The position numbers and the translations under genes are program-made. A stretch of 63,765 bases of DNA, filler included, from Sluysia triapertura (taxonomy: Eukaryota), in assembly GCA_046118255.1 (NCBI GenBank). It is 5 parts of 5 records of this genome, joined end to end, with 100 filler letters (N's around TTAATTAATTAA, not from the genome) between each part and the next. Parts side by side here need not be neighbours in the genome. Positions count along the whole stretch, not along the records: positions 1 to 10,936 come from JBJNIA010191262.1; 4 more parts are not named here. One strand, given 5' to 3'. The notes beneath the pieces are model-generated. The model was not told the origin of the DNA and made no database searches. It saw nothing but the letters and a program-made list of their open reading frames with translations. This document shows, piece after piece, positions 5,615 to 6,803 of the stretch; the first letter of the stretch is position 1; the number at the start of each line of letters is the position of its first letter.

Positions 5615-6556
5615 CTATAATACCAATACATCATTTTCATTATATATATTATACAAAGGTGTATTTTCATTTACAACAATATCCAAGTCAGCATTTCCAT
5701 AATAATATGAATCCTTACTGATATTTCGAATAACAGTATTCAACAAATGTGCTCTATCTACAAGTGCACTTGAATCATCATTATTAATATGAGTAATATG
5801 AACATGCAAATGATAAAACGTAGGCGGATAATGTAAAAAGAATCGCAGTTGTGACGGAGATACATTGAATTTTTGTGAAATTACTTTCTTGCCATTTTCT
5901 TCAATAGATTTTAATAAGCTTACATGATTTTTATTTAAATCTCGAAGAGATCGCAATTGTTTGTTATATATTATAGCTAAACAATGTAAAGAATCCAAGG
6001 ATGATTTATCCCATTTATAATCAAGTACAATGACATAATTACTGTTAATATCATTCTTACTTTCCCGGAAAATTGTTCGATCGGCTTCAGCATTACCTGC
6101 TATTAAATTATTTACCCAGGTAGTTGAAAATTCATTGCTTTCTATAAACGGTTTAGTTATACTGTTATAAATATGCGGAGTTTCAACTAAAAAATGCAAT
6201 TTAGGTTTCATATATTTATCAATATGGCATTGTAAGGCTGGATAGATTGAGGTAACTTTCATTTTGTTTAACGGATCTGTTTCATTTAGTTGAGTTGTAC
6301 TATAAATATCATTTTCTAATAAATTTCTAAACTGATTTATATGTTTATCAATAATTTCTTGAACCTTTACAACATCATTTGGAAACTCACTTTTCGAAAT
6401 TACAACAATTCCACATTTCTCTCGATCACCAAAATTTCCTCTTAAAACAATTAGTTTATCTCTCGGTTTATTATTTAGTATTTCATCAACTTTAAATTCG
6501 GTAATATTATTAACCTTTTTCTGCTTAATTGGAACTTCCTCACTTGAATTGTTCAT
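5615..6556 (-). CDS. DCPS: m7GpppX diphosphatase (scavenger decapping enzyme DcpS), 313 aa, intronless
   Basis: HIT motif HYPPTFYHLHVH plus ENDIY, IYPA, WVNNLI, DYKWD, LRSLRDL and RAHLLNTVI segments typical of DcpS. Confidence 0.95.
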   Translation of the reverse strand: MNNSSEEVPIKQKKVNNITEFKVDEILNNKPRDKLIVLRGNFGDREKCGIVVISKSEFPNDVVKVQEIIDKHINQFRNLLENDIYSTTQLNETDPLNKMKVTSIYPALQCHIDKYMKPKLHFLVETPHIYNSITKPFIESNEFSTTWVNNLIAGNAEADRTIFRESKNDINSNYVIVLDYKWDKSSLDSLHCLAIIYNKQLRSLRDLNKNHVSLLKSIEENGKKVISQKFNVSPSQLRFFLHYPPTFYHLHVHITHINNDDSSALVDRAHLLNTVIRNISKDSYYYGNADLDIVVNENTPLYNIYNENDVLVL

Positions 6557-6803
6557 ATTTAAAATGGAGATATGAAATATCTGATAATCTAATAATTGCA
6601 GATTTAACTAAACCTAAAGGTGTATTTAAATTTTCAACAGCCAATGAATCAAACTCAATAGTTGAGCTTACAAATTTTGCAGAAGTTTTATATTTATTGA
6701 TAAATTCTATATCTACAGTATTATTCTTAAGATTAAGCAAAGTACGTAAAAAACGTTCTCGTAGTAGAGTTAGTTCTTGTTGTTGATCAATTGTAACACT
6801 CAT
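6540..6803 (-). CDS. GEMIN7: Gemin7 (Sm-fold SMN-complex subunit), 87 aa
   Basis: LRERFLRTLL and LNTPLGLVKSAIIRLSDI match recalled Gemin7 motifs LRERYLRSLL and LQTPIGVQAEALLRCSDI. Confidence 0.85.
   Translation of the reverse strand: MSVTIDQQQELTLLRERFLRTLLNLKNNTVDIEFINKYKTSAKFVSSTIEFDSLAVENLNTPLGLVKSAIIRLSDISYLHFKYEQFK

What the first reader, a model, noticed from the sequence alone, without database searches (positions are those of the whole stretch)
5615..6803. Gemin7 and DcpS overlap by 17 nt on the same strand
Seen: the DcpS ATG (6554-6556) lies inside the Gemin7 CDS, whose TGA is at 6540-6542; both are intronless and there is no intergenic room for a promoter or polyA site. Acceptor-like AGs lie 11 nt before the Gemin7 ATG (tatatttag) and 24 nt before the DcpS ATG (ttatcag). 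Established: Gemin7 acts in SMN-mediated snRNP assembly and DcpS in cap scavenging. Inference: a bicistronic mRNA with reinitiation, trans-splicing, alternative acceptors from one promoter, or a +1 frameshift fusion (the DcpS frame is open about 13 codons upstream).
Basis: partly seen in the sequence, partly recalled or inferred. Interest (0 to 1): 0.75.

Follow-up and report, generated by a model that had tools for sequence, protein, structure and literature searches.

The report
Overlapping Gemin7–DcpS two-gene unit
In an AT-rich flatworm genome the small snRNP-assembly gene Gemin7 and the cap-scavenging gene DcpS overlap by 17 bases, an arrangement shared with two distant relatives, and the sequence signs point to one messenger RNA read twice, a known but uncommon animal gene layout.

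Summary
On the minus strand, Gemin7 (6803-6540, 87 aa) and DcpS (6556-5615, 313 aa) are intact and complete by Pfam. They overlap by 17 nt, with DcpS in the +1 frame.

It is not an assembly slip. Four degraded paralogous copies keep the same spacing. Two contigs from relatives (DcpS 43-45% identical) carry the same pair with an 11-nt overlap.

All three sequences have no ATG in any frame between the two start codons. The Gemin7 ATG has T at -3; the DcpS ATG has A at -3. In one relative no poly(A) hexamer lies between the Gemin7 stop and the DcpS stop.

A young processed copy elsewhere in the genome lacks exactly 44 nt (6858-6815, GT...AG).

Mitochondrial codon use marks the organism as a rhabditophoran flatworm, probably a fish parasite.

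- **Best reading (0.55):** a conserved dicistronic mRNA, with DcpS reached by leaky scanning, possibly helped by uORF reinitiation.
- **Still open:** spliced-leader trans-splicing inside Gemin7, or an internal promoter. No RNA data could be obtained.
- **Disfavoured:** a frameshift fusion.

It is a new member of a known kind, of moderate interest.

The parts
6859..6949 (-). Inferred 5'UTR exon 1. Its upstream limit, 6949, is where the processed copy on contig C53863 begins, so it is a possible transcription start. It holds uATG1 at 6873-6871 and the first two bases of uATG2 (6860-6859).
   Evidence: C53863:3663-3881 is 97-100% identical to window 6949-6687, apart from the 44 nt it lacks. One search gives the ATG positions.
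6815..6858 (-). 44-nt GT...AG intron in the 5'UTR (GTAGTAC...TATATTTAG).
   Evidence: It is precisely absent from the processed copy. Another 44-nt GT-AG intron occurs in a CCT gene of the same genome.
6804..6814 (-). 11 nt of 5'UTR in exon 2, just before the Gemin7 ATG. After splicing, a 9-codon uORF (6873-6859 plus 6814-6800) ends in a TGA (6802-6800) that overlaps the Gemin7 ATG as ATGA.
   Evidence: read on the natural processed copy L035. Sequence.
6540..6803 (-). Gemin7 coding sequence, 87 aa. Start context tagtttATGa (T at -3). There is no further ATG in any frame up to the DcpS ATG.
6581..6582 (-). Acceptor-like AG (ttatcag) 24 nt before the DcpS ATG, inside Gemin7 codons Ser74-Asp75. 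It is a candidate spliced-leader acceptor, untested.
   Evidence: The equivalent AG in L001 and L002 lies 26 nt before the ATG and comes from a different Ser codon.
6540..6556 (-). 17-nt overlap: ATGAACAATTCAAGTGA. It covers the DcpS start codon through the Gemin7 stop codon.
   Evidence: The spacing is the same in paralogous copies.
5615..6556 (-). DcpS coding sequence, 313 aa. Start context ttaaatATGa (A at -3). The HIT motif HLHVHITH is intact.
5570..5614 (-). Start of the 3'UTR, with poly(A)-signal-like hexamers AATATA (5607-5602) and ATTAAA (5575-5570). The true 3' end is not determined.
   Evidence: The degraded copy on C199673 stays alignable about 30 nt past the stop.

Best explanation
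Gemin7 and DcpS form one transcription unit that yields a dicistronic mRNA.

Proposed layout: transcription starts near 6949. A 44-nt intron (6858-6815) is removed from the 5'UTR. The mature mRNA then carries Gemin7 followed by DcpS, overlapping by 17 nt.

Proposed translation: Gemin7 is made by the ribosomes that recognise its weak-context AUG. DcpS is made from the same mRNA by 40S subunits that pass that AUG (leaky scanning). In this species a second route is possible: subunits may resume scanning after a 9-codon uORF whose stop overlaps the Gemin7 AUG. Either way they cross 244 nt that hold no AUG in any frame and start at the DcpS AUG, which has A at -3.

Shown: the ORFs, the overlap, its conservation in three species, the AUG-free stretch, the start contexts and the spliced 5'UTR.

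Inferred: that a single mature mRNA exists, where it starts, and the route the ribosomes take.
For: 1. Both ORFs are intact and full length.
2. The same order and the same +1 frame, with an 11-nt overlap, occur in two relatives whose proteins are only 43-49% identical.
3. There are zero ATGs in any frame between the two start codons in all three sequences. P(0) is 0.009, 0.065 and 0.007 by dinucleotide shuffles, and 0.031, 0.098 and 0.043 by codon-order shuffles. The DcpS bodies hold 26, 15 and 16 ATGs.
4. The Gemin7 AUG has T at -3 in both sequences that include it. The DcpS AUG has A at -3 in all three.
5. In L001 no AATAAA or ATTAAA lies between the Gemin7 stop and the DcpS stop. The window has no room at all, so a Gemin7 mRNA must extend through DcpS.
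6. A young processed copy shows that the locus is transcribed from upstream and cis-spliced at the AG 11 nt before Gemin7.
7. The junction is unstructured: z = +0.8, consensus fold -2.5 kcal/mol. That suits scanning.
8. Weak ORF1 context together with AUG depletion before ORF2 are the criteria shown experimentally to mark leaky-scanning bicistrons in green algae (PMC11892635).
Against: - It is unknown whether L001 and L002 come from RNA or DNA.
- The AUG-free state is fixed at the protein level (no Met, Cys or Trp, and no AT|G codon junctions). Synonymous resampling therefore gives P(0) = 1, and chance or protein constraint is not excluded.
- L001 and L002 are close to each other, so there are about two independent observations, not three.
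- If transcription starts at 6949, the spliced 5'UTR holds two upstream AUGs, one in good context. That argues against simple leaky scanning and needs the uORF-reinitiation variant or a more proximal start.
- Flatworms resolve polycistrons by spliced-leader trans-splicing (PMC12582326).
Confidence: 0.55

Rival explanations
1. Flatworm operon resolved by spliced-leader trans-splicing. The pair is co-transcribed. DcpS receives its own capped mRNA when a spliced leader is joined at an AG inside the 3' end of Gemin7 (6582-6581 in the window). A given pre-mRNA then yields either an intact Gemin7-containing RNA or a DcpS mRNA, never both.
For: - The organism is a rhabditophoran flatworm: AAA sits at conserved Asn sites of its AT-rich COX1.
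- Flatworms use spliced-leader trans-splicing mainly to resolve polycistrons, and they often share acceptors between cis- and trans-splicing (PMC12582326).
- An AG preceded by a T-rich run lies 24 nt before the DcpS ATG. A spliced leader ending in AUG (PMC7346339) would be in frame with DcpS there.
Against: - Any acceptor upstream of the DcpS ATG removes the Gemin7 stop codon.
- The AG arises from conserved Ser-Asp codons. In L001 and L002 it lies 26 nt upstream, out of frame and followed at once by TGA.
- This model does not explain the AUG-free Gemin7 or the weak/strong start contexts.
- None of the degraded copies that begin near this AG carries a leader-like sequence ending in ATG.
- Conserved flatworm operon tables do not mention either gene.
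Confidence: 0.2
2. Two independent transcripts. DcpS has its own promoter and start site inside the Gemin7 coding region, and the overlap is only tight packing.
For: The region is 73-78% A+T, so TATA-like and initiator-like motifs are easy to find inside Gemin7. Nothing tested here excludes an internal start.
Against: - The overlap, the frame and the ATG position are conserved in three species.
- AUG avoidance extends over the whole of Gemin7, not only a putative short leader.
- Gemin7 still needs a 3' end beyond DcpS, so a transcript spanning both must exist anyway.
Confidence: 0.1
3. Coupled termination-reinitiation. Ribosomes translate Gemin7, stop at TGA 6542-6540, move back 14 nt (8 nt in the relatives) and restart at the DcpS AUG.
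For: Short stop/start overlaps of this type support such coupling in caliciviruses and some cellular mRNAs (my own knowledge; PMC3923131 is listed but was not read). The overlap is short in all three species.
Against: - Reinitiation after an 87-codon ORF is normally inefficient without a tethering element.
- The 18S-complementary UGGGA motif is present only in L001.
- No conserved structure lies upstream.
- The model does not require the AUG-free first cistron or the weak Gemin7 context that are observed.
Confidence: 0.08
4. A +1 frameshift gives a Gemin7-DcpS fusion protein, or the overlap is a sequencing or assembly error in what is really one ORF or two separated ORFs.
For: The DcpS frame is open 17 codons upstream of its ATG in the window and 16 in L001.
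Against: - In L002 the frame is closed 3 codons upstream.
- The DcpS ATG is conserved at the same place in all three.
- No Gemin7 domain occurs in any of the 159 stored DcpS homologues.
- Four paralogous copies show the same spacing, and the relatives differ by an in-frame 6 nt.
Confidence: 0.02

Closest known systems
Leaky-scanning bicistronic nuclear genes, best tested in green algae (PMC11892635). Animal examples such as human MOCS2 and SNURF-SNRPN and the Drosophila dicistronic genes are from my own knowledge.
   Same: A small first ORF with a weak start context, under-representation of AUG before the second start codon, and both proteins encoded on one same-strand unit with no room for a promoter or terminator between them.
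   Different: - The two ORFs overlap instead of being separated by an inter-ORF spacer.
- The organism is a flatworm.
- The gene pair is different.
- The single mRNA and the translation route are not yet shown.
- The 5'UTR may carry uORFs.
Flatworm operons resolved by spliced-leader trans-splicing, for example cytochrome b-c1 subunit 7 with enolase (Op8 in PMC12582326).
   Same: Same-strand genes with an extremely short distance between them, in a phylum that trans-splices. Co-transcription is likely.
   Different: Known operons have a positive intergenic distance (up to 300 bp in that study, which left out overlapping models). Here the coding regions overlap, so trans-splicing would truncate the upstream ORF. 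No spliced-leader evidence is available.
uORF-controlled delayed reinitiation, as in GCN4 and ATF4 (my own knowledge).
   Same: A short uORF ends at the first main AUG, and a long AUG-free stretch leads to the next start codon.
   Different: Here the bypassed ORF is a real conserved protein gene (Gemin7), not a regulatory uORF. The uORF is seen in one species only and depends on an inferred transcription start.
Viral termination-reinitiation overlaps, as in calicivirus VP1/VP2 and influenza B M1/BM2 (my own knowledge).
   Same: The stop of ORF1 and the start of ORF2 overlap within a few nucleotides.
   Different: There is no conserved 18S-complementary tethering motif or structure. The overlap of 11-17 nt is longer than the 1-5 nt typical of those viruses.

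Membership tests
Gemin7 (PF11095) | Full-length match to the Gemin7 profile above the curated cut-off | tested here: met
   70.5 bits against a cut-off of 25, profile positions 2-76 of 76.
Gemin7 (PF11095) | Homology to the solved Sm-like fold of Gemin7 | tested here: met
   a profile of the three sequences hits human Gemin7 1y96_B (1.7e-10) and 7bbl_D over the whole domain.
Gemin7 (PF11095) | Binds Gemin6 and Gemin8 within the SMN complex | not testable with these tools
   Needs biochemistry.
DcpS scavenger decapping enzyme | N-terminal DcpS domain plus C-terminal HIT-like domain | tested here: met
   PF05652 (1.3e-18) and PF11969 (1.2e-26); aligned to human DcpS 3bl7 over residues 20-307, E = 5.8e-54.
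DcpS scavenger decapping enzyme | Histidine-triad catalytic motif (H-x-H-x-H) | tested here: met
   YHLHVHITH is invariant in the four-sequence alignment and aligned to YHLHVHF of human DcpS.
Leaky-scanning dicistronic gene | Weak start context at ORF1, stronger at ORF2 | tested here: met
   T at -3 for Gemin7 (window, L001); A at -3 for DcpS (all three). The consensus start context of flatworms was not measured.
Leaky-scanning dicistronic gene | AUG depletion between the ORF1 start and the ORF2 start | tested here: met
   0 ATG in 244, 241 and 223 nt, against 2-4 expected from shuffles.
Leaky-scanning dicistronic gene | Both ORFs on one mature capped, polyadenylated mRNA | tested here: inconclusive
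Indirect support only: no poly(A) hexamer between the two stops in L001, and contigs L001 and L002, of unknown library type, span both ORFs.
Leaky-scanning dicistronic gene | AUG-free or short 5'UTR | tested here: inconclusive
   L001 has no ATG in the 85 nt upstream. The window's inferred spliced 5'UTR has two uATGs.
Spliced-leader-resolved flatworm operon | Organism belongs to a trans-splicing lineage | tested here: met
   the flatworm mitochondrial code. Literature.
Spliced-leader-resolved flatworm operon | Spliced-leader acceptor upstream of the downstream gene and downstream of the upstream gene's stop and 3' end | tested here: not met
   The Gemin7 stop (6542-6540) lies downstream of the DcpS ATG, so no such position exists.
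Spliced-leader-resolved flatworm operon | Reads carrying a spliced leader on the downstream gene | not testable with these tools
   No RNA reads were available. The spliced-leader sequence of this species is unknown.
Termination-reinitiation (TURBS type) | Conserved 18S-complementary motif or structure upstream of the stop/start overlap | tested here: not met
   UGGGA occurs in L001 only. There is no conserved fold.
Programmed frameshift fusion | Second frame open across the shift site in all species, and fused homologues exist | tested here: not met
   L002 has a stop 3 codons upstream; no Gemin7 domain in the 159 stored DcpS homologues.

The most novel reading that the evidence does not exclude
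A flatworm lineage has hard-wired an SMN-complex subunit and the cap-scavenging enzyme into one overlapping dicistronic mRNA, translated without spliced-leader resolution. Gemin7 then acts both as a protein gene and as an AUG-free leader that, together with a stop-start-overlapping uORF, sets the Gemin7:DcpS ratio. This would couple assembly of trimethylguanosine-capped Sm RNPs (including spliced-leader RNPs) to the clearing of cap debris. It would also show that flatworm polycistrons need not all be resolved by trans-splicing.
Probability: 0.2. Interest if true: 0.65.

Novelty: new member of a known kind. Interest (0 to 1): 0.45.

Why it matters
If the single mRNA is confirmed, this would be an unusual case among flatworms: a conserved animal dicistron with overlapping reading frames, in a phylum where tightly packed gene pairs are assumed to be separated by spliced-leader trans-splicing.

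It gives a compact natural test case for how scanning ribosomes are shared between two real proteins: 87 codons, no internal AUG, a weak first start and a strong second start.

The pairing is suggestive. Gemin7 helps build Sm-class RNPs, and DcpS destroys the cap remnants of degraded mRNAs. DcpS inhibitors have been pursued in SMN-deficiency therapy (PMC7915832 was the only paper found that mentions both genes). The functional link is only an inference.

For annotation, gene callers that forbid overlaps will miss or fuse such pairs.

Tried and rejected
- **Exact-protein look-ups.** The window's two proteins found no other contig. The L001 Gemin7 is on one contig only.
- **Gemin7 word search.** It found nothing.
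- **Wider conservation.** DcpS loci of an ant, a braconid wasp and two unnamed organisms have no Gemin7 upstream. The linkage is therefore lineage-specific.
- **Fusion proteins.** None among the 159 stored DcpS homologues.
- **Species guess.** I guessed Protopolystoma xenopodis from assembly size and rejected it on GC content, 37.7% against 25-29% here.
- **Copies starting at window 6580.** These begin just after the internal AG. I suspected they were spliced-leader-derived, but their upstream sequence is diverged Gemin7 or deletion junctions, not a leader.
- **The scattered copies as classic retrocopies.** Rejected for most of them. Coverage is biased to the 5' end, three copies share one internal deletion between 9-nt repeats, and several share larger flanks. 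They spread secondarily as DNA. Only the C53863 copy is clearly processed.
- **Permissive BLAST hits.** Hits at 58-66% identity in the AT-rich UTRs were discarded as noise.
- **RNA structure at the junction.** None.
- **Rfam on the window.** Nothing credible.
- **Spliced model.** The spliced form was read on the natural processed copy L035.

Full report
**What is there**

The window is AT-rich, with 19-42% GC in 500-nt bins and about 22-28% around the finding. On the minus strand an 87-codon ORF (ATG 6803-6801, TGA 6542-6540) is followed by a 313-codon ORF (ATG 6556-6554, TAG 5617-5615).

- The first ORF matches the whole Gemin7 profile: PF11095, 1.1e-19, positions 2-76 of 76. As a three-sequence profile it hits human Gemin7 in 1y96 (1.7e-10).
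- The second ORF has both DcpS domains: PF05652 at 1.3e-18 and PF11969 at 1.2e-26. It aligns to human DcpS 3bl7 over residues 20-307 (5.8e-54) and keeps the histidine triad (YHLHVHITH).
- The two ORFs share 17 nt (6556-6540), with DcpS in the +1 frame.
- In Gemin7 the shared bases encode a short tail beyond the last strand of the Sm-like fold. In DcpS they encode the unconserved N-terminus. So the overlap costs neither protein much.

**Is it an artefact?**

No. The own genome (619 Mb in 263,945 contigs) holds more than 40 degraded fragments of this unit. Four that were read across the junction have the same spacing as the window.

Two Logan contigs from other organisms, L001 and L002, encode DcpS proteins 45% and 43% identical and Gemin7 proteins 46% and 49% identical to the window's. 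Both carry the same order and the same +1 frame, with an 11-nt overlap (ATGACAARTGA). The difference from the window is an in-frame 6 nt.

The arrangement is lineage-specific. An ant, a braconid wasp and two unnamed organisms have DcpS without Gemin7 upstream. None of the 159 stored DcpS homologues (the 150 best representatives plus 9 from the word search) carries a Gemin7 domain.

**Which organism?**

The nearest named DcpS proteins are bilaterians at only 35-40% identity. The assembly has several COX1 contigs.

- One AT-rich copy (C243991, 29% GC) has AAA codons at conserved asparagine sites. Read with AAA as Lys, these appear as GGFAKW, PRLKKFSFW and DRHFKT. This is the rhabditophoran flatworm mitochondrial code.
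- Two 46%-GC copies look like teleost COX1, which suggests host DNA.

So this is a flatworm, probably a fish parasite.

Genes in this genome have few and short introns. CCT genes are intronless or have introns of 44-135 nt, including one of exactly 44 nt.

**Transcript structure from a processed copy**

Contig C53863 (3663-3881, minus) is 97-100% identical to window 6949-6687 but lacks exactly 44 nt, window 6858-6815. That stretch begins GT and ends AG (GTAGTAC...TATATTTAG).

This is the signature of a cDNA-derived copy of a spliced RNA. It shows three things:

- The locus is transcribed from at least 6949.
- The 5'UTR has a small intron.

The spliced form was read on this natural copy.

In that form the 5'UTR (102 nt at most) has two upstream ATGs in the window's sequence.

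- uATG1 (6873) has A at -3 and opens a 9-codon uORF. Its TGA overlaps the Gemin7 ATG as ATGA.
- uATG2 is created across the exon junction.

**Signs of how DcpS is translated**

- Between the Gemin7 ATG and the DcpS ATG there is no ATG in any frame, in the window (244 nt), L001 (241 nt) or L002 (223 nt, partial).
- Dinucleotide shuffles expect 3.8, 2.1 and 3.6 ATGs, with P(0) = 0.009, 0.065 and 0.007. Codon-order shuffles give P(0) = 0.031, 0.098 and 0.043.
- The DcpS bodies contain 26, 15 and 16 ATGs.
- The Gemin7 ATG sits in the weakest context class (T at -3; A or C at +4). The DcpS ATG has A at -3 in all three sequences.
- In L001 no AATAAA or ATTAAA lies between the Gemin7 stop and the DcpS stop, where one overlaps the stop codon. 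L002 has one 7 nt after the DcpS stop. A Gemin7 mRNA must therefore run through DcpS.
- The junction has no stable or conserved structure.

**Caveats**

- The absence of ATG is fixed at the protein level, because Gemin7 has no Met, Cys or Trp and no AT|G codon junctions. Synonymous resampling therefore cannot produce ATGs. The signal is either selection on the peptide or luck.
- L001 and L002 are close to each other (69% identical DcpS), so there are about two independent observations.
- The uATGs in the window's inferred 5'UTR do not fit pure leaky scanning. They do fit a variant in which ribosomes finish the 9-codon uORF on top of the Gemin7 AUG, resume scanning and next meet the DcpS AUG. 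That rests on one inferred transcription start in one species.

**Rivals**

- **Spliced-leader trans-splicing.** This is a serious rival because flatworms use it to resolve polycistrons and often share acceptors between cis- and trans-splicing (PMC12582326), and their leaders end in AUG (PMC7346339). Joined at 6581|6580, such an AUG would be in frame with DcpS. Against it: any such site removes the Gemin7 stop. The AG stems from conserved Ser-Asp codons and in the relatives lies 26 nt upstream, followed directly by TGA. None of the degraded copies that start there carries a leader. The model also leaves the AUG-free cistron unexplained. It may coexist with the dicistronic mRNA.
- **Internal promoter.** It cannot be excluded without 5'-end data.
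- **Termination-reinitiation.** It lacks a conserved tethering motif.
- **Frameshift fusion.** It is contradicted by the stop 3 codons upstream of the DcpS ATG in L002.

**Comparison with known systems, and novelty**

This works like the leaky-scanning dicistronic genes known from green algae, insects and a few mammalian loci. It sits in a phylum known for spliced-leader-resolved operons.

It fails one defining feature of such operons: there is no position where a leader could be added without truncating the upstream ORF.

Full-text searches found no paper that links Gemin7 and DcpS as a gene pair. The supplementary tables of the flatworm operon survey mention neither gene.

I rate it a new member of a known kind, of moderate interest (0.45). 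Confidence in the dicistronic, scanning-based reading is 0.55. Long-read cDNA or 5'RACE would settle it.

**Side observations**

- The unit has spawned a family of more than 40 degraded fragments. At least 9 cross the junction. Three share one deletion between 9-nt repeats, and some share larger flanks.
- CCT genes also show many copies with stops.
- Window 2400-4600 is a dispersed repeat.
- A DEAD-box helicase fragment lies upstream of the pair.

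Noticed in passing
G000 contigs C184424, C252955, C8237, C202920, C182510, C192111, C236415, C125, C237142, C201820 and about 30 more (loci L029-L074): More than 40 degraded fragments of the Gemin7-DcpS unit are scattered through the genome, at 60-90% identity with many stops. At least 9 cross the Gemin7/DcpS junction. Coverage is biased to the 5' half. Three copies (C195052, C226170, C41253) share one internal deletion between two 9-nt repeats (ATAT[G/T]AACA). Several share flanks beyond the gene-derived part, so a pseudogene-bearing repeat has been amplified.
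   Followed up: partly
G000:C53863:3663-3881 (L035:1501-1719, minus): A young processed fragment, 97-100% identical to the window. It holds 5'UTR exon 1 joined to exon 2 and the first 39 codons of Gemin7. It ends just after an internal AATAAATATAAA and has no clear poly(A) tail. How it was made and why it is cut short at the 3' end are unexplained.
   Followed up: partly
window 2400-4600 (+): A dispersed repeat: 57 matches elsewhere in the genome (129 first-look candidates) at 68-95% identity. It is richer in GC (31-42%) with strong negative GC skew, and has long T-poor ORFs (2221-3045, 2939-3661, 3707-4216) without any Pfam match. Probably an unclassified transposable element.
   Followed up: partly
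window 8366-8746 (-): A 127-codon open frame matching the DEAD/DEAH helicase domain (PF00270, 3.3e-16, profile 10-118 of 167). It has a degenerate motif I and no continuation, so it is probably a pseudogene fragment about 1.4 kb upstream of the Gemin7 unit on the same strand.
   Followed up: no
G000:C219470:2941-4281, G000:C200653:7704-9044, G000:C192378 (L075-L077); G000:C243991:1556-2890 (L078): The assembly holds teleost-like COX1 copies (46% GC, two variants) beside an AT-rich COX1 that uses AAA for Asn (the flatworm code). This suggests host fish DNA in the assembly of a parasitic flatworm, so part of the 619 Mb may not belong to the worm.
   Followed up: partly
G000 CCT genes, e.g. C187436, C19996, C25424, C182391, C595: A search for one housekeeping family (PF00118) also returns many copies with internal stops beside intact, mostly intronless genes. 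Degraded gene copies therefore seem to be a general trait of this genome. Real introns seen were 44, 69, 82 and about 135 nt.
   Followed up: no
window about 1380-1440: A trinucleotide run that reads as poly-Leu, poly-Tyr/Cys, poly-Asn and poly-Ile in different frames, i.e. a (TTA)n-like microsatellite.
   Followed up: no
L001:1285-1300 and L002:1190-1205: The two relatives share a short 3'UTR element (GTGTTTTATGTAAAT) shortly after the DcpS stop. L002 ends right after it, 28 nt past an AATAAA, which could be a poly(A) site.
   Followed up: no
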